A stretch of DNA of 62,878 nt, the filler included, from Hyphochytrium catenoides (Eukaryota; Protista; Hyphochytriomycota): NCBI GenBank assembly GCA_900088475.1. It is 8 parts of 8 records of this genome, joined end to end, with 100 filler letters (N's around TTAATTAATTAA, not from the genome) between each part and the next. Parts side by side here need not be neighbours in the genome. Positions count along the whole stretch, not along the records: positions 11,596 to 42,160 come from FLMG01003532.1; 7 more parts are not named here. The stretch is one strand, 5' to 3'. The notes beneath the pieces were generated by a model. That model made no database searches. It was not told the DNA's origin and saw only the letters and a program-made list of their open reading frames with translations. Below are positions 13,154 through 42,160 of the stretch, in pieces. Numbering within the stretch: position 1 is the stretch's first letter; every line of letters begins with the position of its first letter. The translations under genes and the position numbers were made by a program.

Positions 13154-14335
13154 ATGAGGTCTCCGCTCTCCTATGGCACTACCTCTTCCATCCTTCTCGG
13201 ACTGTCGCGACGTCTTCAGCAGACATCAGAAGATTTATTAAGCTTCCACGCAGGAGGAGGAGGCGACCACGACGAGGAGCATCACCATGATGATGAGGAA
13301 AGCGACAAGCCCGATGGAAGTGTCGGGGCAGCCTTTGCGCTTGCATTTGGTGCTGGTGCATTTTCACTCATGGGTGCAACAATTATCTTCTGCACCAAGC
13401 ATTTCGATGCAAAGACGTCAGGGTCCAATGTGTTTGTTGCAGGATCGTTAGCCTTGGCCGCTGGGGTGATGCTCTATGTTTCTCTCGTGGATATTGTCGG
13501 TCACTCGGTAGAGCACTTTGAAGCCCATGGGTACTCTCACGGAAAGTCTGGGCTCTTCTCATCTATTTCCTACTTCCTGGGCATGCTGACGATTTATCTG
13601 CTGGACCTGGTGATCCACAGGTTCATTACCCCGGATGCAGAGCATGGTCATGCACCAAGAATTAGCGGCGTCCTTCTCTCCCCACTAGCTTCTGCTGCCG
13701 CTACCACCAACCCTGCATCTGAGGGAACGTCTCCCCGGACGGGAATTTGCTATCAGCAACAGAAAGAAGATAATGGTGGGCTTGACCAGAGCGAGGCAGG
13801 ATATAGCTTATCTAAAAAGGAGCTAGAGGAAACAGAGAAGGAGAAACACTTTGCTTCTTTAAGGCGAGTAGGCATAATGTCAGCCATAGCGATCGGGCTT
13901 CATAACATTCCTGAAGGGTTCGCTACCTACGTGGGTGCTATTCATGACTTCAACATTGGGGCTGCTATCGCACTGGCCATCGCGGTTCATAATATTCCTG
14001 AGGGCTTCGCCATCGCTGTTCCGGTCTACTGCAGCACGGGCAGTAAGGCAAAGGCCTGTCTTTGGTCGCTTATTGCTACCTTTGCAGAACCTTTCGGGGC
14101 CTTTCTGGCCTGGATAGTTCTATCTGCTGAGGGCGACGGCGACACCACCATCAGTGAGGCTACCTTTGGTTGGCTTTTTGGTCTTGTTGGTGGGATGATG
14201 ACAATGGTGGTGCTGCACGAGCTGTTACCCTCTGCCTTTGCCCTCGATCCTCATAATAAGGTCTCAACATTTGGGATTGTACTAGGAATGTTTATTATGG
14301 CAGTCAGTTTGGTGCTATTTGCTTACACTGAGTAG
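13154..14335 (+). CDS. ZIP family (ZupT/GufA-like) zinc/iron permease, intronless
   Basis: 393 aa. Contains LALAAGVMLYVS, twin metal-site motifs IGLHNIPEG and IAVHNIPEGFAIAVP, AEPFGA, GGMM..VVLHELLPSA and a His/acidic N-terminal segment. Confidence 0.93.
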   Translation: MRSPLSYGTTSSILLGLSRRLQQTSEDLLSFHAGGGGDHDEEHHHDDEESDKPDGSVGAAFALAFGAGAFSLMGATIIFCTKHFDAKTSGSNVFVAGSLALAAGVMLYVSLVDIVGHSVEHFEAHGYSHGKSGLFSSISYFLGMLTIYLLDLVIHRFITPDAEHGHAPRISGVLLSPLASAAATTNPASEGTSPRTGICYQQQKEDNGGLDQSEAGYSLSKKELEETEKEKHFASLRRVGIMSAIAIGLHNIPEGFATYVGAIHDFNIGAAIALAIAVHNIPEGFAIAVPVYCSTGSKAKACLWSLIATFAEPFGAFLAWIVLSAEGDGDTTISEATFGWLFGLVGGMMTMVVLHELLPSAFALDPHNKVSTFGIVLGMFIMAVSLVLFAYTE

Positions 14336-19579: not shown

Positions 19580-21047
19580 TCATGTCGTGAAGTTCCATCC
19601 TTCTGAAGTATAGAAGGACGACCGGACAAAGGTGACTCTATTTTCTGGAGAGAGCACAAAGATAATCACACATTGACAACGAGCAGGAGTGATCAACGGC
19701 GGCAAGACCTCCTCGACGCCGTCCTCTCCACCATCTGTCAAAGCTTTGATCTCTGTCACGTCCTCCTGATCAGCACCGTCTATCTTTGGGATAAACTCAA
19801 ACTTCCCGGTGATCATGAAGCGGTCTCCTCTTGGATCCATTGGCTTTATATCAATGTCCTTCCAGCCAAACTTCTTATAGAGCTTGTCGCAGTTGCGCCT
19901 AATAAACAAGAATCGAGACCAGTGAGCCCTGTCAGTCTAATCCGTCAGCGGTAACGCAAAGAAAGGAAAGACGAATAGATAGAGGAGCACAAAGGCAAAG
20001 AGAAAGCTAATAGCATGGATGTCCAAGGTGCTTTGAGAACGAGTACCTTGCTTCAACGCATGCGCCAGGACCACCGAAGGCCTCAAGCGGTGCGTCAGAA
20101 AAGACTTTCTTCCCAATCTGGATCTTATCGCAGACAAAGAGAATGCTGTCATGATAACAGCCCAACGAGCTCTCAAAGTCTGTTGCACCGCTGAAGCCTC
20201 CAAGGCACTGTGTAACCACCATTTTGCGGAAGTTCATCTGAGACTTCAGCTCCATCTCTTTCCCTACTGTGCTACCTCCACCATCGGTAGGGCACGACTT
20301 GATGGTCAGCAGCTGCTGCATCATCTGATAACGCCTCTCGGCTAAAGCCAGACGCTCCTCCATCATCATGATCTTCTTGGTTGGTTGGCTGGCTGTGTTG
20401 GCCACTTTTCGTTTCTCACTCAGCGTGGCGGAGGATGCAGATTGATGTCCAGCCACAGCACTCTTCCTCCTTCGTTTTGGGCTGGTTGTGGTTACCTTGT
20501 TGCCGGTTTTGACGGAAGCGTTGGAGGACGCCGCAGGTCTTGTTGCTTTGTTCTTCCGGCCGTCCTTCTCGTCTTTGTTCTTATCGCTGCGTTTGCACTG
20601 TGGCCTTGATGTGGATGATGGAACACAAGCAGGAAAGTCGCGGACGGTAGCGTCATTGGAAGGCATCTTTTCTTCTGGAGGTTCGCTTTCTCCTTCCTCT
20701 CTAACAACTATTATCGCTTCTTCTTCTTCCTCAGCTACTACGGCTCCGCTGTCATCATCATCGGATAAACCTTCTTCTAGGATGTCCCGCAAGCAGTCAA
20801 TGACCGCGGTGTCCTCTTCGTCTTCTACTGAGGGATGACTAGCGCTAGAAGGAGGACAGGAATAGTAGTGCATTGGCAGGCCACCCGCAAAGGAGTCTGT
20901 CTCTTCTAAAGGAAGAGTAAACCTTCTCCCTCGAGGAAACTCCGCACAGTTCTCAGATATTTCTCTTCTGCTGCAGTCCTGACGAGCATCCATAATTGAG
21001 AAAGTGTCAGAGCTCCCTGGGACGATTTCTACTCTAAAGCGCTTCAT
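19580..21047 (-). CDS. Hypothetical two-exon protein (acidic/low-complexity middle, globular C-terminus)
   Basis: Exon 20047-21047 (ATG of MKRFRVEIV) and exon 19580-19928 join in phase through AG|GTACTC...CTGACAG|G, giving ...CVEAR-AHWSRFLFIRRNCDK... Confidence 0.6.
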
Positions 21048-24000
21048 GGTAGCTGTATAAGTCCTTGCCGTCAGAAGCTTCCCCCTCCTTATGGCGAGCT
21101 TGTAGTACCGTTCTCTCTTATTGGACTGATGGATAGCTCGGTAGCCTGCCCAGCAAGACACAGCAGAGAAGGAGGCGAGAAGCCGGGAAGCGGAAAAGTG
21201 ACGAAGGAGAGCAGGCAGCAGGCAATGGAATGGAAACAGCAAAAGAATCGAGCAGGGAAGATCGATGTGCGATGAGTATGGAAAGTGAAAAGCTGAGAGT
21301 GGACTTATCGCCGAGTGAGCGGAGGGCTAGCAGCTACTACTATTGGGAGGGATGAGGCGGGACCTGCTTGAGGCTACGGAATGTTGCCAACCAGCGCCAG
21401 CAGTAAGCAACAACCAAGCAGTCAGCAGCCAGCAGGCACGCCACAGCGGTTCGAAGACGACGACTGGTTGGCTCCTTTGGAGGAGGAGCAGGACGATGTT
21501 AACAGAATCTACAGCTGGGAGTATCAGACAGAGGATAGCCCTCTGCACTGGTCACAGACTGGTCGTAAAGAAAGGAAGCCGAAGAGGGAGACCCAGCAAC
21601 CACGACCGTCGCAACCTCTGCCAAGCCCAAGCCGGTTTATACATTGGACAGCAGCGTTGCCCCTACAAGCTACAAGGCCAGCAGCAGGCAGGCCGGGCAG
21701 CCTTGCCAGCTAAAGGGTTGTGCCACATATTTTGCCCAGTCTTGAAGCAAGAGCCATTGGCGTCTGATCCCACGACACCCCATGGACAAACCGTCTTGAG
21801 TTCTGCTAGCCATGTACTTCAGGGTCAACATATTTCAAGGGCACCTTCTAACTCCCAGCCGTCGAGGAGTTATGTCTAAAATGGTGAAAGCTGTTCTCTC
21901 CTCTCAAAAGAGCTGCATTACTACTTGTAGCTGGAATGGTCAGACACACTGGATTCCCACCCAACACACGTAGAGCATTATGTTAGGGGTGGGCATAATT
22001 CTACAGGTAGCAGGGCAGAATAGTGGCACATACTATCATGGCGCTATGTTTATTTATCATGAGGCAGGAGGCAAAGAACGTGGCTCGATTGGCGAGGAAA
22101 GTTAAACTTCCATCTCCTTTTTGGCTCTCGTTAGTCCTAAATAATATAAGGGGGACAGGGGGGCGGTCTCAGGGCCGCAATTCTAGGGAATGTGAGCGAG
22201 TGGCTTGTGGGGACATACAGGAAAAAGGTGGGAAGCACCATACACCAAATTTAGAGACTCATTCCATGTCTTTGACGATAAGTCTATCCGAAGGTTAAGG
22301 TTTTGGCATGTTTAAGAGAAACACTGCTGGGGTAACCACTTGCCTGTTATAAAAACAATACAATACCGTGTATAGAGGAGACCAAGCATGACGGTTTGCC
22401 GAAAATAGTAGGTTGAAGTGTGAGAACTATTCGACACCCTTTGTTGTAGTTTCCTTTATGGGTGAGTGGGGAAAAAGACGGCAAGGGGTGGGAAGCCTGA
22501 GGTTCAACATCCAGTTCAACATACAAGTCACAGGCTGAAGCCCTGAGCAAGACTCAGAAGTCAGACCATACATTCCAAAAACTTGAAAACAATAGCTGGA
22601 ATATTACGGTAATGAAACCTTTGTATCTTATGACTCTACTCTATAAAGAAAAGATTACAAGGAAAGGAAAGGTACATTTGCCAGATTTCTTGAACCTTTT
22701 GGCCATAGTGAGTAAGGGGATGGGTGGGCGTTTGATGCTTTTGGCGGTTCGGGACCGAGAAATGGTGGGGCCAGGGACCACAAGTCTCTTTTTGTGAGGT
22801 ATCTGGCGATGGGGTTATCTATGATAGAAAGATACCAAAGCAGCTGCACAACAATAAACGGCAGTGATAGACAAGGGCCAAGAAGGCTCAAGTTCACTCT
22901 TTAGCTTGCCCATTGAGCCTTCATTTCGTATAGTAATCAGGGTCTTGGTCGTTGTGATGGGCTGAATGGTGTGCACTGCTGCGTGTGGTGGCTCTCTGCT
23001 GCTGCTTGTTCATGGCCTGTGCCGCCCTCCTCTTTCTTCTCCTCCTGACTAGAAGAAGGGAGGGCAACGATGACGTTAATCTCGTTCTTCATCATTTTTT
23101 CATCACCATTCACCCTAGATGGTTCATGATGATGGGAAACAGAACGGCCTGATAAGTCTGATGTTGGCTTATTTAGAGATAGAGCAGCAGGATGTAGGAC
23201 AACGTCGCTTCGTTTATCGTCGATCATCCGCCGGTTGCAGCGTGTTTGCTTTCTGCTTTTATTATCACCAAGGCGATCTGGTTTATTAATGACCTCAACA
23301 AGCGAAGGATTGTATCTTTTGTTGCTGTTCGTGGTACTTTGCTCTTCTTCTGCAGTCCTTCTCTCCTCTCAGGTCGCCATACCGGGTAGCCAGAGTAACA
23401 AACAAGCGAAGAAGGGGAAGCGATAGGAGAGAACGGGACCGTATAGATGGGCAAAATCCAAGACCGCACGTCGAAGGAGCTCGCAGCGGCTGCCTATTTT
23501 TCTCCTCCCTGCGGTCGCTCCTCCCGGACAAGCTGTGATATCTTGGACATGGATGGTCATAGCTAGTAGGGGATGAAGAAGAGGGCAGCATGTAGCAAAC
23601 CATGATGTTGCTTCTTGCCTACGTCAGACGGACAGAAGGCGGATAAAAGGATGTTGGAGCGAGCCACAAAGGCCATGACATGGAATAAATACAATCACCG
23701 CTGGCGAAGACAGAAGGGCTGTAAATGTAATAGAAAGAGGGATGGAGTGCCTCTGGACAGCCATCCTTGCTCAATGCAATAAGCAGCCAGGTGCTACGTC
23801 GTCAAATGTAGGGTGGCTCCTTACATCATTGAAAAGTCGTAATGTGCCTTCAATGTGGACAAGGGATAGGCGGAGATAGAGAAGCAATGCTTAATGAATG
23901 ATAGCGAAGCCTTCTTTTAGCGCCACTTCTTTTTGGACTTCGCTTATATGACAAGAGATCGGACGGTGTTGGCTTGCTAGCGTGTAAGGTCTGGCAGTCA

Positions 24001-25271: not shown

Positions 25272-26789
25272 CTATTGGACCTGCACCTTCTTTGGCTTAG
25301 CAGTCACCAACATGGTCCGCGAAACAAACTGCGCATCTGGACGAGTAACGACGGCCAGACAATGTACACAGTGAATAGTACCCAGAATGACCCAAGCCTT
25401 CTTTGGATCCTTCTTCTTCCAGCGGAGGAGACCGCCCTGGATTACGAGCGTTAATAGACACACGTAACAGGCTGAGAGAGTATGAAGGACCAGGTCACCT
25501 CGCATCCAAAGACACGGTGCGCTAGGCATGCACTCTGGGAGAAAGAACCACCACCAAGACTTAACCACCCAGGTAGTTAAGGCAAACAACCCCAACAGGT
25601 CAAAGTTGAAGAGTTGAATGAGTTGCGTCGCGACGCAGAGAAAGATGACGGACAGATATCCAAGGACTCCTACGTCTCGTGCAACACTAAGCGAGGTTTT
25701 CTCTCTTGCCAGCACGCTAATCCCCGCAAAGATGAGATGCACCACGGCCTCATGATAGACAACCATACTGAATGCCTGCCATAAGGTCAATGGACTGGTA
25801 AGTGCCGCCGAGATCAATATCTCTGAAAAGGCCGAGCCCATGATCTGCCTCAGCACTGCCAGAACCAAGTAGCTTCTATCATTGTTAGCGCAAACCAGGC
25901 CCATGGATAGCGCCGCTAGGATATCTATTTGCGTGACACCCTCGTCGTCGGGTTGCTTGTCACACTGAGTGCTGAGATGTAACAGACAACTCTGGGTGCT
26001 TCTCTTGAATGCAAGCCAGTAAGCGACGCGCATGGCAATGGAGAGGGTAATCCAGAGAACGCCAGAGTATTGGATGCGTTCCCAGATGATCTCTAGCTGT
26101 GAAAGAAGAAACTTCAACTCTTCTCTGTGAAGGTCCCTCTCCCCAAAATGAATGCAGATTGCAGAGCTCCCATCTATATGAGCGCCATTATCAGAAGGTA
26201 TGTAGCTGTAGATACAGACTCCCCGAACGCCTGACACCTCCAGATGATAGCGATACTTCCCAGTCTCTCTACAAAGTCGTAGCTTTGAAAGTGTATCTGA
26301 AAGCATCGTGGGACCCAAGCAGGGCTGCGAGTTCTTCTTCATAATATATCTCTGATCAAACAGTGGCTCCGTCCTGTCGCATAATAGCATGCGGAGGGCG
26401 TTCTCGTCATTGCTCCTGGGCACTCCGGTTCGAATTGATTGAGTGTTCAGGAAAGTGAAGTACGTCGTCCCAGGGATAGGCCCACAGTAGTCCATCCGCT
26501 CGTCAAGCTCTAAAGTTCCCATTGATAAAGTGATGATGGAGTCTGTTTCCCAGCTGATATTCATCGCAAAACTCTTCTGCTCGGCCATCAATAGCATCGG
26601 GGTGTCTACATCTTCAAAGGAGTAATCTGTCTGCGCCAACGCGTATATAAAGATGACTAGCTCAACGATTGCCCACACCGCACCCAGTAAGTGCACCCGC
26701 GGAAGAGAGATGAAGAGGAGGCTCTCGTCTGCATCGTGAAGGTTGTCACGTCGGATAAGAAGAGAGCGTAGCCGCCTTGTTCCCCCCAT
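25272..26789 (-). CDS. Hypothetical multi-pass membrane protein, intronless, 505 aa
   Basis: Long uninterrupted ORF: N-terminal TM helix, a ~180-aa Cys-containing soluble loop, then several hydrophobic helices. No family recognised. Confidence 0.65.
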   Translation of the reverse strand: MGGTRRLRSLLIRRDNLHDADESLLFISLPRVHLLGAVWAIVELVIFIYALAQTDYSFEDVDTPMLLMAEQKSFAMNISWETDSIITLSMGTLELDERMDYCGPIPGTTYFTFLNTQSIRTGVPRSNDENALRMLLCDRTEPLFDQRYIMKKNSQPCLGPTMLSDTLSKLRLCRETGKYRYHLEVSGVRGVCIYSYIPSDNGAHIDGSSAICIHFGERDLHREELKFLLSQLEIIWERIQYSGVLWITLSIAMRVAYWLAFKRSTQSCLLHLSTQCDKQPDDEGVTQIDILAALSMGLVCANNDRSYLVLAVLRQIMGSAFSEILISAALTSPLTLWQAFSMVVYHEAVVHLIFAGISVLAREKTSLSVARDVGVLGYLSVIFLCVATQLIQLFNFDLLGLFALTTWVVKSWWWFFLPECMPSAPCLWMRGDLVLHTLSACYVCLLTLVIQGGLLRWKKKDPKKAWVILGTIHCVHCLAVVTRPDAQFVSRTMLVTAKPKKVQVQ

Positions 26790-32989: not shown

Positions 32990-34371
32990 TTACCTACCCA
33001 CTGTGGCGTCTGCCGGTTGTAAAATACTAGTATGAACCTCGCTTTGCTTCCTCTTTCTCTTTCTAGACCGCCGCCGAGAAGCGCCCAGTCTACGGGGTGG
33101 CCGCGACCACTTAGCGAGCTCCCAAAACTGTCCTAAGAGGAATGTACCGATAACATTGCAGACATCGGAAGGGATTCCTCTCAATCGGCATAAGGCAAGG
33201 ACATCAGCTGCGGGTGTTTTCCAATCCTCCTGACTCCACGCACATGCTAAGGCAGATGCAGTCTCGTTTTCTGGTGTCGCTTCATAGACTGTATTCATGG
33301 CCACCGCTCCTACCTGAAGATCCCAGGCTCTGAGTGAGCCGTCTCTACACACAGCCACCACGTTTTGTGAGTCCGGCGTCACAGCTACCAGGGTTGCAAG
33401 CCTGGTAGTGTCGTAAAGAGGCACCATGCTCGAAAGAATATCATCTCGATCTGGCTCTCGATAGCCCAGACGAATTCCCAAGCGCTTGGTCCAGCTTTTG
33501 GGGTCATGTACGAGGATGGGCCCAGAAGAGCAGACGGCCTGCTTCCCGTCCGGAGTAAAACATAATGTGCCATAAAGTAATCTCTTGTCATATAAGATGG
33601 CCTCAAGTCTGCCAGTGTAGAGGTTCCATACTTTCCCAGTCTCCTCCATCACAGTAAGGTTATCTCCACGGGAAATCAGATGTTCGCCGTTTGGCGTCAA
33701 TGTGCAACGATAGCCTCCTTGCTCAATTTCAAGAGGAGGACCTAGAAAGAAGCATTTTGCGATGGATTTTCCAGGCAATCTGGGGAGGTTCATTCAGTCC
33801 AACAACGCGTATCGGAGCCCATCATCGGGTCCGCCTCCATATGCACATACGAGAGACCGTCCATCAGGAGTCACCATCAACATGGATGGGTAGAAGGGCA
33901 GTCGTAAGGTTCTCTGCCGTTGCAAAGTTCTGAGATCCCAGAGTGTCGCGCAAAGGAAGTCATCCCGTGATTGCTCACTACGTACGGTGCGCCAAGAGCT
34001 ACTGATGAGTCTTGAAAGGCCTGTCTTTCCATCTGGAAATTGAACGAATCTACCCGTTCGTCCCCTTCAGAGCAATCTTCAACAGCTTGTAGCTGACCTT
34101 CACAGGCACCCGTCATAAGGTTCCATATTCTAATGGCCGGGTCACCGACCGCTGTTGAATATAGCCTGGTATGGTCCGCGGAGACAACCAAGGCGCGAAT
34201 GGCAGCGGACATGTGGCGCTTGATGAGACGGTTCTTCACATGATGCCAGCGGTGGTGGTGATGCCTTGCTGCTGCATCATCGGTGGGCTGAATATGCGCA
34301 CTCTTCCTATCCTTCTTCCTTGCATCATGGTAGGGAAGGGTAAGGCTACGAATGTGCTGCCCGGTCCGCAT
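32990..34371 (-). pseudogene. WD40-repeat protein, disrupted (frameshift ~33950, in-frame TGA 33794-33796)
   Basis: WD blades IRALVVSADHTRLYS..DPAIRIWNL, TLWDLRT..VTPDGRSLV, LTPNGEHLIS..KVWNL and VAVTPDSQNVVAVCRDGSLRAWDL. Continuity needs one frameshift and read-through of LLD*MNLP. Confidence 0.7.
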
Positions 34372-36131: not shown

Positions 36132-39100
36132 TTACTCGTCATCTTTCCCTTTAGTGGAGCTTCCTGCCAACTGGGACTCCGGGACCACAACGCCCTTCAC
36201 TGCCAGGAACAACGGCTTTCCAATCAAGACCGCAAGCACCACCGTGGTGTTTAGGATTATGAAGATGGAGTTGAGGACAAAGTGAGCAGTAGGTGGAAAG
36301 TCCAGGAAGTTAAGAAAGACCAGAAGAGCACCCAAGAAGCTCGTGTTATAGATTGCAAAGCCAATCTGCCGACTCTCGTTGAATCGCTGGAACTTGCCTG
36401 TGACCGCGCCTTGTACTCGGAAGCATAACAGCGAGCCCCATAAGAGCATCACACCTTCAGCGGCGACGATGCCCCATGGCGTCCACGAATATTGAGAAGC
36501 ACAAGCTTCATAGCGCTCTCCAGAGCCCGAGACCCAAGTTTCCACCATCCGTGGAGGATCAAGCAGTGTCCATAGTGTCATATAGAAGACAAAGAACGAT
36601 AGAATACCCGCAAAGAACTTCATCACCTGAGAATCTGTGATAAGGACCTTTGTGAGCTTCTTCTTACTGAATATCAAGGCTACTCGACGGGTCTTGGCGA
36701 ACAGCGGGCCGAAGATGAAACAGAAGGATAGATGGCCTATCCATGGCTGCGCGACGCAGACGGCATTGGTTGGAAGGGGATAAAGGGCGAAAACAACGGC
36801 ATAGCACATGATGGCCCCGAAGCACGTCACCAAGGTGAATTTGAAGCTGCCGCGGAGGAGAACATATTGCCGGTGATAGCACAGGAGAACCACTAGTACC
36901 AAGGCAAGAGCCGTGAACACCGCTGCTAGGATGGCCACTGCAAGCCTCGTAGTGCCAAGCTCAAAGTCCACGTTTAGAGGGGCACGGAAGCCACACGACT
37001 CAAAATTCAGTCGGCTCTCAGGAAGGTCATACACAGAGCCATTGCGAGATAGCCCTGTCAGCCAAACGTTCTTCATACATTGATTGCATGGTTCGCCCTC
37101 GTCGCTGGAATCAATGAAAGGTCCGCACTGTAGATCCCCAAACGAGAAGCTTCCCGAGTCATAAAATGCATTCAACAGCTTCTCGCGACTATCGAAGCTC
37201 CCTGCCAATCGCTTTAGCCCGCTAATTAGCATCTGTGCAGTTAGATAACCTTCCAAAGTCGCAGCGTTCCTCTCAGCGGTCTTATTAAGGCGGTCGACAG
37301 AGCTATGAAAGTCCCTGACGACCTTTAGGTCGGTGTTGGTTGGCAAGGGAACAACCGACGAGAAAAGAAACCTGTCTAGGGCAGAAGGGGAGGCAACGGC
37401 CGCTGCTGCCAGCTGCTCGCCTACTTCAGAGCTTTCCACAGTGGAGAATGCCAAGAACCAAAGGTCAGGGAATGAGCTCCCCCATGATCTAATGGCCTCA
37501 GTCACAAATGCTATCAACACATCGGTAGGCACGATCATAATAATAGCTTCAGGTGCCTGGCCCGAAGCTTCACCACCTTCCATCAAGTGCCTCAATGCCT
37601 CGTTAAGACTGGATGAGGAAACAGCGTTATAGGCGTACTGAGAAGCTGCCGACAGGCGCTTAGTAGCTAAAGCGTCCCTGACGACTCCACTAAGCTCTTG
37701 GCCAAAGCTGTCATCTGTATATAGTATGGACACCCTGGTAACTGCATGTGTCTCATAAAGAAACTTGATCATGGCCATTGCTTCGTCATAGTAGGAAGCC
37801 CTAAGATTTATTGCCGTCCTGTCAAACGGTCGTCGGAGATGAAGAGACCCATAGGGAGATCCAATAAATGGAAGCGGTTGTCCAGAGACTGTTTTTGCGA
37901 GATCAAACGCTGTCCTGCTGTCCCAGGACGAACCTAGAATGGCAAGAAGGTCAGGGTTACTAACAAGGGAGAGCACTGCATTGCTCTGTGCCGCTGAGGA
38001 GGAGCCGTCAGAAAGGTCGTCATACACAGACGTGAGATCTAACTTGATGCCCAGCAAGCCACCAGCGTCATTGATATCCTGAAACGCGGCGCGGAGACCA
38101 GTGTTGAAGGCGATACTATTGGCTACATGCATGCCTTTCCTAGGTAAGATTTGACCAAACTTAAGAAACGTCCACGCTTTCGGGAGGTAGCCACAGCTGT
38201 CAAAGCTAAAGTATGGCTGGTCTTCTAGCTTTTGATAGCGACCCTGCGGAGCAATACTGGTGAGGCCGATCGTCCGCATGCAGATGTTACACCCGCCGTT
38301 CAGGTCCTTAGGCAATAAAGGTCCACAGCGTAGCCCATCAAAGTTGAAAGAGCCTGAGTCATATATCTCCTCAAGGAACCGCTCTCGGGTAAACGTGTTG
38401 GTTCCTATGCGTCTGATGGCGTCGACTACCAGGCGCCCCACCATATATCCCTCGATCGCAGCCGAGGAATCGTATGATGTAAGGTTGTTCGTGCCAAGAG
38501 GTGACGATGGTGAGGCCGCAGCCTGGTGCATTGCCGCCTGGTAGCTCATGACAATGGGCTGTGAGGTGTCGTGTGCTAAAGGCACCACCTGGGTGACGAC
38601 GATATTTCTAAGCACTGTGGCCGGCACCCCAGATTGGTTGTTGGCAAGTATGTCCACAAAGGGTTGTGCCACGTTTGATAGCGCCGCATACATCGTTGAA
38701 AGGGGCAACACCTTGGCTGCCTCCCTTATAAACACTGCACTAGCTTCACTGACGCCGCCCACTATGACGGCCTCTGGCTTCTGATCAGAGTGGTTTGCTA
38801 TATATTGAAGGGCAGCGCTAATGTTGCTCGTGCCTCTGGGATAGCGGCCTTCGCTATGTAGGCGCAAGTTGTTGGATTCTAATGCCAACAGAAGCCCCTC
38901 TCGACAGGCCTCCCCAAATGAGTCATTTTGCATCAGAAGTGCTATTCTTTTGATCTTCTTTACGTTGATCAGATATTCAACCACCGTTGCCGTCTCATCC
39001 AAATAGGATGGCCTTAAGTTGACGATATGCTTGCTAAAGGGCTTACTGAGGAAAGGTGCTCCAGTCAGAACACCAATAAAAGGATAACCACCCGCAGTAA

Positions 39101-39491
39101 TTGATGGTAAGGCAGCTTCTGCCGTCGCTGTACCAAGCCATCCTATCATTGCGAAGATATCACTCCGGTTGCTTAGGGCTTCTGCGTATTGCCTAGCTTT
39201 GGCGGGAAGATACTGATCGTCATACGACTCCAGTCTAAAGGACAAGCCAGGGATGGCCGCGGTGACATTTGCCTCGTAGAAAGCGGCCTCAAGACCATAG
39301 CGGATGCCAAAGCCTCTAGAAGAGAGTTGACCACTCTGCGCAGAAGCCTGCGCGAAGATGATGGTTGCATTTAAGCCGCAGACGTTGGATCCGAACAGGG
39401 CGGGTGGTGAGGAGCCAAGTGCCTCCTGACAAATGGTGGACACTGTCAGCATCATTGACAGCCATGCTGCAGATGGATATGGCAGCCACAT
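36132..39491 (-). CDS. Class C (GABA-B/Grl-like) GPCR with two tandem type-1 periplasmic-binding (Venus flytrap) domains, intronless, 1119 aa
   Basis: Signal peptide; two ~400-aa repeats (NLRPSYLDET / NLRASYYDEA, QNDSFG / TDDSFG, EGYMVG / EGYLTA). 7TM with VCVAQPW..LSFCFIFGPLFAKTRRVALIF, LWTLLDPP and FNESRQIGFAIYN. Confidence 0.9.
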   Translation of the reverse strand: MWLPYPSAAWLSMMLTVSTICQEALGSSPPALFGSNVCGLNATIIFAQASAQSGQLSSRGFGIRYGLEAAFYEANVTAAIPGLSFRLESYDDQYLPAKARQYAEALSNRSDIFAMIGWLGTATAEAALPSITAGGYPFIGVLTGAPFLSKPFSKHIVNLRPSYLDETATVVEYLINVKKIKRIALLMQNDSFGEACREGLLLALESNNLRLHSEGRYPRGTSNISAALQYIANHSDQKPEAVIVGGVSEASAVFIREAAKVLPLSTMYAALSNVAQPFVDILANNQSGVPATVLRNIVVTQVVPLAHDTSQPIVMSYQAAMHQAAASPSSPLGTNNLTSYDSSAAIEGYMVGRLVVDAIRRIGTNTFTRERFLEEIYDSGSFNFDGLRCGPLLPKDLNGGCNICMRTIGLTSIAPQGRYQKLEDQPYFSFDSCGYLPKAWTFLKFGQILPRKGMHVANSIAFNTGLRAAFQDINDAGGLLGIKLDLTSVYDDLSDGSSSAAQSNAVLSLVSNPDLLAILGSSWDSRTAFDLAKTVSGQPLPFIGSPYGSLHLRRPFDRTAINLRASYYDEAMAMIKFLYETHAVTRVSILYTDDSFGQELSGVVRDALATKRLSAASQYAYNAVSSSSLNEALRHLMEGGEASGQAPEAIIMIVPTDVLIAFVTEAIRSWGSSFPDLWFLAFSTVESSEVGEQLAAAAVASPSALDRFLFSSVVPLPTNTDLKVVRDFHSSVDRLNKTAERNAATLEGYLTAQMLISGLKRLAGSFDSREKLLNAFYDSGSFSFGDLQCGPFIDSSDEGEPCNQCMKNVWLTGLSRNGSVYDLPESRLNFESCGFRAPLNVDFELGTTRLAVAILAAVFTALALVLVVLLCYHRQYVLLRGSFKFTLVTCFGAIMCYAVVFALYPLPTNAVCVAQPWIGHLSFCFIFGPLFAKTRRVALIFSKKKLTKVLITDSQVMKFFAGILSFFVFYMTLWTLLDPPRMVETWVSGSGERYEACASQYSWTPWGIVAAEGVMLLWGSLLCFRVQGAVTGKFQRFNESRQIGFAIYNTSFLGALLVFLNFLDFPPTAHFVLNSIFIILNTTVVLAVLIGKPLFLAVKGVVVPESQLAGSSTKGKDDE

Positions 39492-40802
39492 TTTGCCACT
39501 AGAGGGAGCGGGCCCTCTGAGTCCGTCGTTGTCGGCTCAGGATCGCATGATACCAACTACTACTCGAAGCGCTGACAAGGCGGGCGTGAAGTTTTACAAG
39601 TGAACGGCAATGGTGATTGACATTAACCTTGTTTTTATCTGTTTAGTCCACATACCAGACGGAGGTCAAGCCATGTCATACACCAGGATTCAGGGCTATT
39701 TTCTCTACTTCTCTCTCTCTCTCTCCTGGAGCGCTCTGTTGCGCGCTCCAGCTAAGTACATGAAGAGTCGAAGTTGCGGTTAGTACCTCCCAGCTATCCT
39801 TAGCTTATAAGGAAGCATCATCTCCTACAAGGGACTCCACAGATGGTGGAGAGGAGGTTTAGCGACAACATAGCCAAGGGAGTCCATTATAGGTTCTGCA
39901 GTCTTATTTCTCTTCCAAAGAGAGCAGTTTTTATGTGAAGTCTAACATGAACTGCACTTCCCTCTTCTTCACAACTGAAGGGCTTGGCACTACTTAACGC
40001 CCAGCTGTTCGTTGCATCCTCTCCCATTACAAGGAAGAGTGATGGTGATGGGCACGGGCAGCAGCGCGGAACAGCTAGGTAGAACAGTCCTTTCCTACGC
40101 TTCTTGAGACGTCTTCGTGGCAGTTGACCAGCACCCAGCCTAATAAGCAGTAGCCAACAGCGCTGTTGCTCGGAGACAGTGCACTGCTGGTCTGAGATTG
40201 TGATGTGGGGTGTGTCTTGATAACTAGGAAATAACGGTTGTTACAATCTTGGAAGATCCTTGAATGAGAGTGAGAGAGAGGGAAATGTGGCGTGCTTTCT
40301 GACAGCATCAGAGGTATTGGGCCGTCCCACTACCTGCTATGTTATCCTCTGCGCTATCCAGAATGATTCTGTCCATTATTGACCTTATTTCTCATGATTC
40401 CACAATTTTATCTAGAATATCAAGGTATATTGGTTCCTCTACACCCAACCGATCGACCTCGAGTTGCTATCAGAATCTGCCTTCCTTACCCCCCTCTGCT
40501 GAGGGTTCGTCTTATCGGTGGGACGAGATGGTAGGACGGAGTGGTAGGACCGAGGTCGTTAGCGGCTCAATCCAACCAAAATGGGAGGCTTCGATAAGAC
40601 TCCCAAATTACCTGCTGGTGGGTGGATGGAGGGAAGTCAAGCTTCTATTACGAATCCTCCAGCGTTATAAGGAATTTTGAAACCTACATGTAGATGAGAA
40701 ATGTTTCAAGACCAGAAACGAACCGCAGATGTGAAACACCTTGTGCTGCAATAGTAGTAAGAAGATAAGGCCTTAGTAGGATGACGATACCGCAGCAACC
40801 AG

Positions 40803-41532
40803 CAAATGAAGCACAGAAGAATCGTTTTCTGCAGATAGACTACCGGCAGCTGCAGCGTAACTTGAATCTCGAGCGCGGCAGATTTAATACATAATTCGTA
40901 TTCGTATTCATCCGACCCGCGAATGATGAGGGGAAGAAAGAGAAGAGCTGGCTTATCTATTATTCTTCTGCTTCCTTTTTATTAGCCTGCTGGCTTGCTG
41001 TTGTTGTGTCCACTTCNNNNNNNNNNNNNNNNNNNNNNNNNNNNNNNNNNNNNNNNNNNNNNNNNNNNNNNNNNNNNNNNNNNNNNNNNNNNNNNNNNNN
41101 NNNNNNNNNNNNNNNNNNNNNNNNNNNNNNNNNNNNNNNNNNNNNNNNNNNNNNNNNNNNNNNNNNNNNNNNNNNNNNNNNNNNNNNNNNNNNNNNNNNN
41201 NNNNNNNNNNNNNNNNNNNNNNNNNNNNNNNNNNNNNNNNNNNNNNNNNNNNNNNNNNNNNNNNNNNNNNNNNNNNNNNNNNNNNNNNNNNNNNNNNNNN
41301 NNNNNNNNNNNNNNNNNNNNNNNNNNNNNCAAATGAAGCACAGAAGAATCGTTTTCTGCAGATAGACTACCGGCAGCAGCAGCGTAACTTGAATCTCGAG
41401 CGCGGCAGATTTAATACATAATTCGTATTCGTATTCATCCGAATGATGAGGGGAAGAAGGAGAAGAGCTGGCTTATCTATTCTTCTGCTTCCTTTGTTAT
41501 TAGCCTGCTGGCTTGCTGTTGTTGTGTCCACT
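40803..41532. repeat. Near-identical ~210-bp segments flanking a scaffold gap (probable two alleles)
   Basis: 40803-41016 and 41330-41532 match apart from a few SNPs and indels, on either side of an N run. Confidence 0.8.
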
Positions 41533-42160
41533 TCTTGAAAATGGACAGAAGAGAAGGCGACGGGAAGGTGCAGACCGGCGGCAGCGGCAATCTTCTTCTT
41601 GGCTCTTTTTCTTTGTTTTTGGTGGAAAGGCAGACGGTGAGAGTTTGATGCTTCTTATTATTTTAGCGTAGTCGCCATAGAGGAGCTCTCTTTGCATGCA
41701 GCAGCGGCAGAACAGCAGGTGCATCAACACTGGGATCCATTGCTTGCCGCGATCAAAGAACAGAAGAAAGAGGAGCGCTCCTCGTTGTTGTTGCTTTCTT
41801 CTTCATTCGCCTTTGAACAACGGCCTCATCTAACTTTTTGCAGTGCCCACCAGGAGGAGGAGAAGAGCGCCGCNNNNNNNNNNNNNNNNNNNNNNNNNNN
41901 NACTTTCTTCGCTTTTACAACAGGAGTGCAACAAGAAGAAGAGAGATTGACACAGAGCCAAAATAATCAGTTTGTTTCATCTAACAGTTCTAACAAGCCC
42001 CCGATGGGAATTGCATTTCGAAGTCTTTGGAGCTTGAGAGGAGCTTGCCGCCCAACGTTCTTCTCTGATCTACACCCCTAGTGGTGAGCAATAACTGCTA
42101 ATAAGAGAATCTAGAGCTATTCTCCGAAATTCTCATGATGGAACTTGCAATTCTACGGCC

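What the first reader, a model, noticed from the sequence alone, without database searches (positions are those of the whole stretch)
36132..39491. Class C GPCR with a double Venus-flytrap ectodomain of bacterial-ABC / trypanosome-receptor type
Seen: signal peptide, two homologous ~400-aa domains (~39365-38190 and ~38175-36980), then directly a GABA-B/Grl-like 7TM with a very short tail. There is no Cys-rich linker and no intron. Each repeat resembles bacterial LivJ/LivK-fold ABC ligand-binding proteins (YDDQYLP, GWLGTAT, N.R.SY.DE, IA...QND.FG, EGY). Each ends in a matching Cys-rich motif (YDSGSF.F..L.CGP...CN.CM..(I/V).LT...F(D/E)SCG). Established: canonical class C GPCRs carry one flytrap per chain and work as dimers, while paired flytraps are known in trypanosomatid receptor adenylate cyclases (ESAG4/GRESAG4) and BvgS-type kinases. 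Inference: a double-flytrap sensor module was shuffled onto a G-protein output, allowing two-ligand sensing or an intramolecular flytrap dimer. This may be an undescribed receptor class.
Basis: partly seen in the sequence, partly recalled or inferred. Interest (0 to 1): 0.8.

Follow-up and report, generated by a model that had tools for sequence, protein, structure and literature searches.

The report
Class C GPCR with two flytraps
A soil eukaryote encodes an intact G-protein-coupled receptor of the glutamate/GABA-B class that carries two bacterial-type ligand-binding "flytrap" domains in a row instead of one; the same layout exists unremarked in amoebae, chytrid fungi and other protists, so it is a real but not unique variant of a known receptor class.

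Summary
ORF 36132-39491 (-) encodes 1119 aa: a probable signal peptide, two homologous Peripla_BP_6 flytraps (27% identical, E 3e-43), a 12-residue stalk, a 7tm_3 domain closest to GABA-B2, and a 21-residue tail. There is no NCD3G domain and no intron. AlphaFold2 folds every part confidently.

It is not unique. An exhaustive search found the same 2xVFT+7tm_3 layout in Ceratiomyxa, Clastostelium, two chytrids and unnamed metagenomic clusters. Paulinella has a 3xVFT version. I found no paper describing it.

The "Cys-rich motif" is a eukaryote-specific cysteine pair at the end of each flytrap (C401/C433), read as a disulfide. This lineage has a second pair (C389/C404).

The distal flytrap keeps the bacterial-type conserved motifs in every lineage and the proximal one has lost most of them (41 versus 8 invariant columns). 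The best reading is distal sensor, proximal transducer, like a GB1/GB2 pair in one chain.

Tandem flytraps of this type also sit on receptor kinases and on polytopic membrane proteins. In this gene's lineage the two copies group together in the tree. The trypanosome link is weak. The intramolecular dimer, the ligand and expression are untested.

The parts
36132..39491 (-). Whole intronless ORF, 1119 aa plus stop: the tandem-flytrap class C GPCR
39414..39491 (-). Probable signal peptide, aa 1-26. The hydrophobic core is aa 9-22, and A-L-G precedes the putative cleavage site.
   Evidence: Hydropathy and sequence. AF2 gives a helix at 9-22 with low pLDDT. No signal-peptide predictor was available, so this is inferred.
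38184..39371 (-). Flytrap 1 (membrane-distal VFT, aa 41-436), Peripla_BP_6 type. It keeps the bacterial-type conserved motifs.
   Evidence: Pfam E 9.9e-31. 4kv7 matches at E 1.6e-33, TM 0.87, Z 47. pLDDT is mostly above 90. 41 invariant columns fall here among 9 same-architecture proteins.
38193..38327 (-). Cys-stapled C-terminal beta module of flytrap 1 (C389, C401, C404, C433)
   Evidence: C401 is present in 57 of 63 eukaryotic domains and is D in bacteria. C433 is present in 51 of 63 and lies in an extension that bacteria lack. C389 and C404 occur only in this protein and P0001.
36984..38171 (-). Flytrap 2 (membrane-proximal VFT, aa 441-836), Peripla_BP_6 type. Most of the conserved motifs are degenerate.
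   Evidence: Pfam E 1.1e-25, plus PF25493 at 30 bits over its C-terminal third. 27% identical to flytrap 1. Only 8 invariant columns.
36993..37127 (-). Cys-stapled C-terminal beta module of flytrap 2 (C789, C802, C805, C833)
36957..36992 (-). 12-residue stalk between flytrap 2 and TM1 (aa 834-845). There is no NCD3G cysteine-rich domain.
   Evidence: Pfam finds no NCD3G. Secondary structure.
36198..36956 (-). Seven-transmembrane domain, 7tm_3 (aa 846-1098). It has the TM3-top Cys912, the ECL2 Cys997 on a beta hairpin, FAKTRRV in TM3 and NESRQIGFAIYN in TM6.
   Evidence: Pfam E 1.3e-35. Alignment to GABA-B2 at E 8.8e-13. Helices. C912 and C997 are invariant in A2.
36132..36197 (-). Short cytoplasmic tail (aa 1099-1119) and stop codon. 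No coiled coil.

Best explanation
This is a functional gene for a class C (glutamate/GABA-B family) G-protein-coupled receptor whose ectodomain holds two LivJ/4kv7-type Venus flytraps in tandem.

Shown:
- The domain order and a confident fold for every part.
- The class C hallmarks of the 7TM.
- The architecture recurs in at least three eukaryotic groups.
- A eukaryote-specific cysteine pair closes the end of each flytrap.
- There is a lineage-wide asymmetry. The distal flytrap keeps the conserved bacterial-type motifs, several of which align with ligand-contact residues of LivK. The proximal flytrap has lost most of them.

Inferred mechanism:
- The distal flytrap is the ligand sensor.
- The proximal flytrap acts mainly as a coupling module that passes the distal closure on to a GABA-B-like 7TM, through its own lobe 2, the 12-residue stalk and the ECL2 hairpin. 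The 7TM then activates a heterotrimeric G protein.
- In effect this is the GB1 (binds ligand) / GB2 (transduces) division of labour written into one chain.

The ligand is a small molecule of unknown kind. The residues that hold the alpha-amino acid in LivJ/LivK are not all kept.
For: Architecture and fold:
- ORF and Pfam domains and internal homology at E 3e-43.
- AF2 mean pLDDT is 85.9 for the full length and 87.4 for the ectodomain.
- Flytrap 1 matches bacterial binding proteins at TM 0.87-0.89 and Z up to 47. Flytrap 2 plus the 7TM aligns with full GABA-B, mGlu and CaSR chains.

The 7TM:
- It aligns with GABA-B2 through the TM3-top Cys, FAKTxRV, DPxR, the ECL2 Cys and N(D/E)S(K/R)xIGxxxYN.
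- C912 and C997 are invariant among relatives.

It is a real protein and not a fused gene model: transcript-derived proteins of Ceratiomyxa and Clastostelium have the same layout.

Asymmetry:
- 41 invariant columns fall in flytrap 1 and 8 in flytrap 2.
- The motifs GxxGTPT, TGA, QNDxFG, YxRNT, SFVG and TQVVP are kept in d1 and degenerate in d2 in all seven distinct receptors compared (9 rows, two pairs near-identical).
- Identity to relatives is 27-49% for d1 and 19-37% for d2.
- LivK S79, A101/T102 and Y150 align with T121, T143/G144 and F192, which lie inside these motifs.
Against: - No RNA run exists for this organism, so expression is unproven.
- Nothing here tests G-protein coupling, ligand binding or oligomeric state.
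- The arrangement of the two flytraps is not confidently predicted (pTM 0.53 and 0.67), and I had no coordinates or PAE to inspect.
- Loss of the conserved motifs in flytrap 2 could mean a new ligand rather than no ligand.
- LivK E226 and Y202 align with S272 and V247 (a weak 26-bit alignment), so even flytrap 1's ligand class is open.
- A second, diverged copy of the 5' third, with indels, is present in the reads.
Confidence: 0.6

Rival explanations
1. Two-ligand sensor. Both flytraps bind different small molecules, and the receptor integrates them as a coincidence detector or as agonist plus modulator.
For: - Both halves fold as complete bilobed domains with high confidence.
- Flytrap 2 keeps NLRASYYDE, PFIG and EGY, and it is under enough constraint to stay 37% identical to P0001.
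- Structural relatives of this fold bind very different ligands: amino acids, hydroxybenzoates, urea, acetamide, fatty acids and pyroglutamate.
Against: The proximal domain has lost most family-wide motifs in every lineage, and it has lost different residues in different lineages. That looks more like relaxed pocket constraint than a conserved second site.
Confidence: 0.22
2. Intramolecular pseudo-dimer. Flytraps 1 and 2 pack side by side like the two flytraps of an mGlu or GABA-B dimer, so a single chain with a single 7TM can signal without dimerising.
For: - The two flytraps are homologous, and only about 7 residues separate C433 from the first strand of flytrap 2, so they must touch.
- The asymmetry resembles GB1/GB2.
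Against: - Inference from type I PBP topology: the end of flytrap 1 lies in its lobe 2 and the start of flytrap 2 lies in its lobe 1. A very short linker therefore favours a head-to-tail stack over a parallel lobe-1-to-lobe-1 dimer.
- pTM of 0.53 and 0.67 gives no confident interface.
- No solved chain aligned across both flytraps.
- Class C activation as known needs two 7TMs.
Confidence: 0.12
3. The gene is inactive or decaying (a recent pseudogene or silent paralogue), or the ORF is an assembly chimera.
For: - There is no RNA evidence.
- A diverged second copy of the 5' third, with one-base indels, is in the reads.
- The gene is intronless in a genome whose neighbouring genes appear to have introns.
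Against: - A 3360-nt open frame is not expected by chance.
- It is colinear with relatives over its full length, with conserved Cys and motif positions.
- The 45%-identical relative is also a single open frame.
- Zero-difference contigs support the sequence.
Confidence: 0.04

Closest known systems
GABA-B receptor subunits (class C GPCR without a cysteine-rich domain)
   Same: - GABA-B2 is the best solved-structure match for the 7TM (E 8.8e-13), sharing FAKTxRV, DPxR, the ECL2 Cys and the N(D/E)SxxIGxxxYN motif.
- The flytrap joins TM1 through a short stalk with no NCD3G.
- One flytrap is conserved and one is degenerate, as in GB1 and GB2 (the GB1/GB2 roles are from established knowledge).
   Different: - Here both flytraps are on one chain with one 7TM.
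- The flytraps are Peripla_BP_6 type rather than ANF_receptor type.
- There is no coiled-coil tail.
- The cysteine staples are absent from GABA-B.
Bacterial Leu/Ile/Val-type ABC substrate-binding proteins (Peripla_BP_6; PDB 4kv7, 3lop, LivJ/LivK)
   Same: - The fold matches at TM 0.87-0.89 and Z up to 47.
- Identity to the nearest bacterial proteins is 29-39%.
- They share the motifs DDGYEP, GxVGTPT, TGA, NxRASYxEET, QNDSxG, YxRNT, TQVVP and LEGY.
   Different: - The bacterial proteins are single, soluble or lipid-anchored domains.
- They have D where the eukaryotic domains have C401, and they lack the C-terminal extension that carries C433.
- LivK E226 and Y202 are not kept.
Trypanosomatid receptor adenylate cyclases (ESAG4/GRESAG4), with two flytraps per chain
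   Same: - They have two type I flytrap-like domains in one extracellular region (PMC6027212).
- The Pfam model of their binding-protein-like domain (PF25493) hits the C-terminal third of flytrap 2 above its cutoff.
   Different: - The output is a single TM helix plus a cyclase, not a 7TM.
- The hit is partial (profile positions 230-340 of 373) and is absent from flytrap 1.
- Peripla_BP_6 scores far higher than PF25493.
BvgS/EvgS sensor kinases and CdgH (bacterial tandem flytraps)
   Same: They have tandem flytraps with a division of labour between the distal and proximal domains (PMC4352136, by title and abstract; PMC5431781).
   Different: - Their flytraps belong to a different binding-protein class (type II, from established knowledge). 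No such Pfam family hits this protein.
- The output is a histidine kinase or a diguanylate cyclase.
Unnamed tandem-flytrap class C receptors in public protein sets
   Same: These share the 2xPeripla_BP_6 + 7tm_3 layout and the cysteine staple:
- Ceratiomyxa fruticulosa P0007
- Clastostelium recurvatum P0015
- Lobulomyces angularis KAJ3390371.1
- Clydaea vesicula KAJ3226582.1
- Metagenomic P0001, P0018 and P0024
   Different: - They are 19-49% identical per domain.
- The Paulinella versions (P0005, P0008) and P0004 have three flytraps. P0004 also has an Ephrin_rec_like module before the 7TM.
- C389/C404 are found only in the window protein and P0001.

Membership tests
Class C GPCR (Pfam 7tm_3, glutamate family) | Match to the 7tm_3 profile above the curated cutoff | tested here: met
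   119.3 bits against a cutoff of 33.5, covering profile positions 8-248 of 251. 123.8 bits on the isolated region.
Class C GPCR (Pfam 7tm_3, glutamate family) | Seven membrane helices after a large extracellular N-terminus | tested here: met
   Hydrophobic segments. The AF2 helices run 846-872, 883-903, 909-942, 953-977, 1004-1029, 1040-1061 and 1067-1098.
Class C GPCR (Pfam 7tm_3, glutamate family) | Conserved Cys at the top of TM3 and in ECL2, a basic residue in TM3, and an acidic residue at the start of TM6 | tested here: met
   C912 and C997 align with the GABA-B2 cysteines. K933 lies in FAKTRRV and E1039 in NESRQ. C912 and C997 are invariant in 9 relatives. The functional meaning of these positions is from established knowledge.
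Class C GPCR (Pfam 7tm_3, glutamate family) | Extracellular Venus flytrap of the type I binding-protein fold | tested here: met
   There are two of them.
Class C GPCR (Pfam 7tm_3, glutamate family) | Coupling to heterotrimeric G proteins and obligate dimerisation | not testable with these tools
   This needs biochemical assays.
mGlu/CaSR/T1R subgroup | NCD3G cysteine-rich domain between the flytrap and the 7TM | tested here: not met
   No NCD3G hit at E up to 1. Only 12 residues separate C833 from TM1.
GABA-B subgroup | ANF_receptor-type single flytrap and a C-terminal coiled coil | tested here: not met
   ANF_receptor scores only 2e-14 against Peripla_BP_6 at 1.6e-56, there are two flytraps, and the tail is 21 residues. 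The 7TM is GABA-B-like.
Peripla_BP_6 (LivJ/LivK-like binding proteins) | Profile match and a bilobed type I fold | tested here: met
   E 9.9e-31 and 1.1e-25 for the two halves. TM 0.87-0.89 and Z 41-47 to 4kv7, 3lop and 4m88.
Peripla_BP_6 (LivJ/LivK-like binding proteins) | Residues that bind the alpha-amino and carboxylate groups of Leu/Ile/Val | tested here: inconclusive
   S79, A101/T102 and Y150 have counterparts (T121, T143/G144, F192), but Y202 aligns with V247 and E226 with S272. The alignment scores only 26 bits.
Trypanosomatid receptor-cyclase ectodomain (PF25493 / PF25495) | Full-length match of each flytrap to the cyclase binding-protein-like models | tested here: not met
   Only flytrap 2 hits, over profile positions 230-340 of 373, at 30 bits against a cutoff of 27.2. 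Flytrap 1 has no hit at E up to 0.1. There is no cyclase domain.

The most novel reading that the evidence does not exclude
A eukaryote-wide, undescribed family of disulfide-stapled LivJ-like flytraps is used as a stackable sensor cassette of two to at least four copies, and is plugged into at least three kinds of membrane output: class C 7TM, receptor kinase, and an unannotated polytopic domain that follows Ephrin_rec_like repeats. In the GPCR version the cis pair of a sensor flytrap and a degenerate transducer flytrap would replace the trans flytrap dimer of animal class C receptors. That would make it a natural single-chain test of the class C activation mechanism.
Probability: 0.2. Interest if true: 0.8.

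Novelty: new variant of a known kind. Interest (0 to 1): 0.55.

Why it matters
The textbook rule for class C GPCRs is one flytrap per chain, with activation by rearrangement of a flytrap dimer. Receptors that carry two or three flytraps in one chain break the first half of that rule. They occur in amoebozoans, chytrids, Paulinella and this soil eukaryote.

The consistent pattern of a conserved distal flytrap and a degenerate proximal one suggests that the GB1/GB2 division of labour evolved in cis as well. These proteins could serve as natural single-chain models for how flytrap closure reaches a 7TM. They could also serve as compact scaffolds for biosensors, and as markers for how bacterial binding proteins were recruited into eukaryotic signalling.

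The value is moderate, not high. The layout is already in public databases, its components are all known families, and nothing functional has been measured.

Tried and rejected
- **Word-index protein search.** I ran it three times: full length, a profile of 9 relatives, and the 7TM region only. It returned almost nothing beyond P0001, apparently swamped by single-domain binding proteins where those occur. The census therefore rests on the exhaustive HMMER search, which lists only the best 150 of 6703 hits.
- **Quick domain tree.** It was badly optimised. Forcing Q_d2 and P0001_d2 together gave a likelihood 83 units higher. I discarded it in favour of the careful tree. A second AU test did not finish.
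- **Rhizopus microsporus P0183 (1136 aa).** Its length suggested another double-flytrap receptor, but it has one ANF-type flytrap and a long tail.
- **ESM Atlas.** The search by features and the search by shape found only single-flytrap clusters.
- **VIA-align against 48,161 chains.** No chain spanned both flytraps.
- **Identifying the organism.** This failed. The run labels are coded, the window's proteins are not on record, the ZIP neighbour gave mixed algal and plant clusters, and there were no Rfam hits.
- **Bacterial contamination** is rejected. 7tm_3, the ZIP gene and the split WD40 ORFs are eukaryotic.
- **A fused gene model** is rejected. Transcript-derived relatives have the same layout.
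Full report
**1. What is in the sequence**

The minus strand carries one uninterrupted ORF from 39491 to 36132, 1119 codons long. An in-frame stop lies 16 codons upstream of the ATG, and there is an A at position -3.

Pfam on the whole protein gives Peripla_BP_6 with two stretches (E 1.6e-56), 7tm_3 at aa 849-1090 (E 2.9e-34) and weaker ANF_receptor. It also gives a partial match to PF25493, the binding-protein-like domain of trypanosomatid adenylate cyclases. There is no NCD3G.

The halves aa 31-440 and 441-835 align over about 400 residues at 27% identity, E 3e-43, including the terminal Cys motif.

Hydropathy shows an N-terminal hydrophobic stretch and the transmembrane cluster between aa 846 and 1098. 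Of the 18 cysteines, the 11 upstream of TM1 comprise three near the N-terminus (C21, C38, C196) and two clusters of four: C389/401/404/433 and C789/802/805/833. The tail after TM7 is about 21 residues.

**2. Is the gene real?**

The neighbours are eukaryotic. There is a ZIP transporter at 13154-14335, and WD40 fragments are split between two ORFs at 32990-34371, which implies an intron.

The protein is colinear over its full length with P0001. P0001 is 1171 aa, 45-46% identical, and also a single open frame on its contig. It is also colinear with transcript-derived proteins of two amoebozoans. Neither a fused gene model nor a missing exon is therefore likely.

Contigs of two runs from different samples of one study carry the ORF. 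Zero-difference contigs cover all of it in X1, which may be the source of the assembly, and most of it in X2. Soil and rhizosphere metagenomes hold 151-nt contigs with 0-2 differences, so the organism lives in soil.

No RNA run is available, so expression is unproven.

A second, 90-95%-similar copy of the 5' third, with one-base indels, is also in the reads. Its nature is open: it could be an allele, a paralogue or a pseudogene.

**3. Structure**

AlphaFold2 on a 41-row alignment gave mean pLDDT 85.9 for the full length. The ectodomain alone, on 35 rows, gave 87.4.

Each half is a complete bilobed alpha/beta domain that ends in a small beta module. Seven helices and an ECL2 beta hairpin follow.

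The pTM values are 0.53 and 0.67, so the packing between domains is not reliable. I had no coordinates or PAE to inspect.

Foldseek and VIA-align put bacterial Peripla_BP_6 proteins first: 4kv7, 3lop and 4m88 at TM 0.87-0.89 and Z 41-47. Animal class C, iGluR amino-terminal and natriuretic-peptide-receptor flytraps score lower, at Z 24-32. Full GABA-B, mGlu and CaSR chains align over flytrap plus 7TM. No solved chain aligned across both flytraps.

**4. The 7TM**

GABA-B2 is the best solved relative (E 8.8e-13). The alignment carries:
- the TM3-top Cys (C912);
- FAKTxRV in TM3 (K933);
- DPxR after TM4;
- the ECL2 Cys (C997);
- N(D/E)S(K/R)xIGxxxYN at TM6 (E1039).

C912 and C997 are invariant among nine relatives. 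Membership in class C is met on every feature I could test. The mGlu/CaSR-type cysteine-rich domain and the GABA-B coiled coil are absent.

**5. How common is the layout?**

The exhaustive HMMER search of 1.84 billion cluster representatives gave 6703 hits, of which 165 were at E <= 1e-30. I mapped domains with the query's own parts and with Pfam.

The following proteins have 2xPeripla_BP_6 + 7tm_3:
- P0001 (sequencing-run contig)
- P0007 (Ceratiomyxa fruticulosa)
- P0015 (Clastostelium recurvatum)
- P0018 and P0024/P0155 (metagenomic)
- P0046/P0156 (the chytrids Lobulomyces angularis and Clydaea vesicula). P0156 has the automatic UniRef name 'G-protein coupled receptors family 3 profile domain-containing protein'.

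P0004 and the two Paulinella proteins (P0005, P0008) carry three flytraps before the 7TM. P0004 also has an Ephrin_rec_like module.

So the layout exists in Amoebozoa, Fungi, Rhizaria and this unidentified soil eukaryote. It is not a one-off.

I found no paper that describes it. No paper holds both Peripla_BP_6 and 7tm_3. Surveys of fungal, amoebozoan, holozoan and pan-eukaryotic GPCRs mention diverse N-terminal domains, and N-termini of up to 1667 residues, but not tandem flytraps. Phrases for tandem flytraps retrieve only BvgS/EvgS, CdgH and trypanosome cyclases. This is absence in the library I could search, not proof of absence.

**6. The same flytrap type on other outputs**

Tandem flytraps of this family also precede:
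- a single TM helix and a protein kinase (P0075);
- Ephrin_rec_like repeats followed by six to nine hydrophobic segments with no Pfam name (P0009 of Cafeteria, and P0011, P0012, P0016, P0017, P0025).

Giant proteins combine a Metallophos domain with six or seven flytraps (P0003, P0006). The general idea of a reusable multi-flytrap cassette is therefore supported.

**7. The Cys motif explained**

In an alignment of 63 eukaryotic and 12 bacterial domains, C401 is present in 57 of 63 eukaryotic domains and is D in bacteria (CNQG against DNQG). C433 sits in a C-terminal extension, present in 51 of 63 eukaryotic domains, that bacteria lack.

C389 and C404 occur only in the four domains of the window protein and P0001.

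The co-occurrence suggests the disulfides C401-C433 (family-wide) and C389-C404 (lineage-specific). These pairings are inferred, not shown.

**8. History of the duplication**

In the careful maximum-likelihood tree the eukaryotic domains separate from the nearest bacterial proteins (100/100). The backbone inside the eukaryotic group is unresolved.

The window's and P0001's distal and proximal domains fall in one clade (99/96), together with the very long chytrid d2 branch. The amoebozoan d1 and d2 pairs are separate, and Paulinella's three domains scatter.

Together with the shared C389/C404 pair, this favours an in-lineage duplication or homogenisation for this gene, and repeated duplications overall. 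It does not favour capture of one ancient double module. The shared functional asymmetry described in the next section argues the other way, so I leave this question open.

**9. Asymmetry and mechanism**

Among the nine same-architecture proteins, 41 invariant columns fall in flytrap 1 and 8 in flytrap 2.

The motifs shared with bacterial proteins are DDxYxP, GxxGTPT, TGA, NxRASYxDE, QNDxFG, YxRNT, SFVG, TQVVP and LEGY. They are kept in the distal domain of every lineage. In the proximal domain most of them are degenerate, and in lineage-specific ways. Identity of the window protein to its relatives is 27-49% in d1 and 19-37% in d2.

By alignment with LivK, T121, T143/G144 and F192 correspond to the ligand-contact residues S79, A101/T102 and Y150. 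E226 and Y202 correspond to S272 and V247. The pocket is therefore conserved within the family but is not clearly an alpha-amino-acid pocket. Structural relatives bind amino acids, hydroxybenzoates, urea, acetamide, fatty acids or pyroglutamate.

My best reading is as follows. The distal flytrap senses an unknown small molecule. The proximal flytrap mainly transmits that closure through its lobe 2, the 12-residue stalk and the ECL2 hairpin to a GABA-B-like 7TM, which then activates a G protein. This is inference.

The rivals are two-ligand sensing, an intramolecular pseudo-dimer, and an inactive gene. The short linker joins the end of flytrap 1, which lies in lobe 2 by type I topology, to the first strand of flytrap 2, which lies in lobe 1. 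That favours a stacked arrangement over a side-by-side one, and it argues against the mGlu-like pseudo-dimer. I could not check this on coordinates.

**10. Verdict**

This is a class C GPCR variant with tandem bacterial-type flytraps. It is present but unremarked in several eukaryotic lineages, and it is not a new receptor class. The trypanosome link is weak: only the C-terminal third of flytrap 2 passes PF25493. Novelty is 'new variant of a known kind', and interest is moderate.

Noticed in passing
window 38614-39800: Contig depth about doubles here, and extra contigs at 90-95% likeness overlap the 5' third of the gene and its upstream region. One carries one-base deletions at 39433 and 39444. 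In run X2 the only contig over 38896-39424 has 7 differences, a one-base deletion at 39063 and an ATA insertion behind 39296. This points to a second, diverged copy, which could be an allele, a paralogue or a pseudogene.
   Followed up: partly
window 36398/36405 joined to 38323: A contig in both X1 (depth 396) and X2 joins these places and skips about 1920 nt. The shorter side is only 41 letters. It may be a repeat elsewhere in the genome. Unexplained.
   Followed up: no
window 13154-14335 (+): A single-ORF ZIP zinc transporter of 393 aa (Pfam Zip, E 3.2e-36).
   Followed up: partly
window 32990-33793 and 33877-34371 (-): Two adjacent ORFs with weak WD40 and beta-propeller hits, separated by about 83 nt. 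They are probably exons of one gene with a short intron, whereas the receptor gene has no intron.
   Followed up: no
window 25272-26789 (-) and 20007-21242 (-): ORFs of 505 and 411 aa with no Pfam match at E <= 0.01.
   Followed up: no
window 41017-41329 and 41874-41901: Runs of N (scaffold gaps) lie near the end of the piece. The 'ORFs' at 40982-41341 consist of X residues and are artefacts.
   Followed up: yes
P0075; P0009, P0011, P0012, P0016, P0017, P0025 (proteins): Tandem flytraps of the same Cys-stapled family are fused to a receptor kinase (P0075). They are also fused to Ephrin_rec_like repeats followed by 6-9 hydrophobic segments with no Pfam name; P0016 has a weak TRP PF06011 hit. 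This is possibly an undescribed flytrap-gated polytopic protein.
   Followed up: partly
P0003 (3020 aa) and P0006 (2821 aa): Giant proteins with an N-terminal Metallophos domain followed by six or seven Peripla_BP_6 flytraps and almost no hydrophobic segment. Their origin is unknown (sequencing-run contigs of 31 and 13 kb).
   Followed up: no
P0029 and P0044 (Cantina marsupialis): Receptors with one recognisable flytrap plus 7tm_3, preceded by about 365 residues with no Pfam match. This stretch might be a further, highly diverged flytrap.
   Followed up: no
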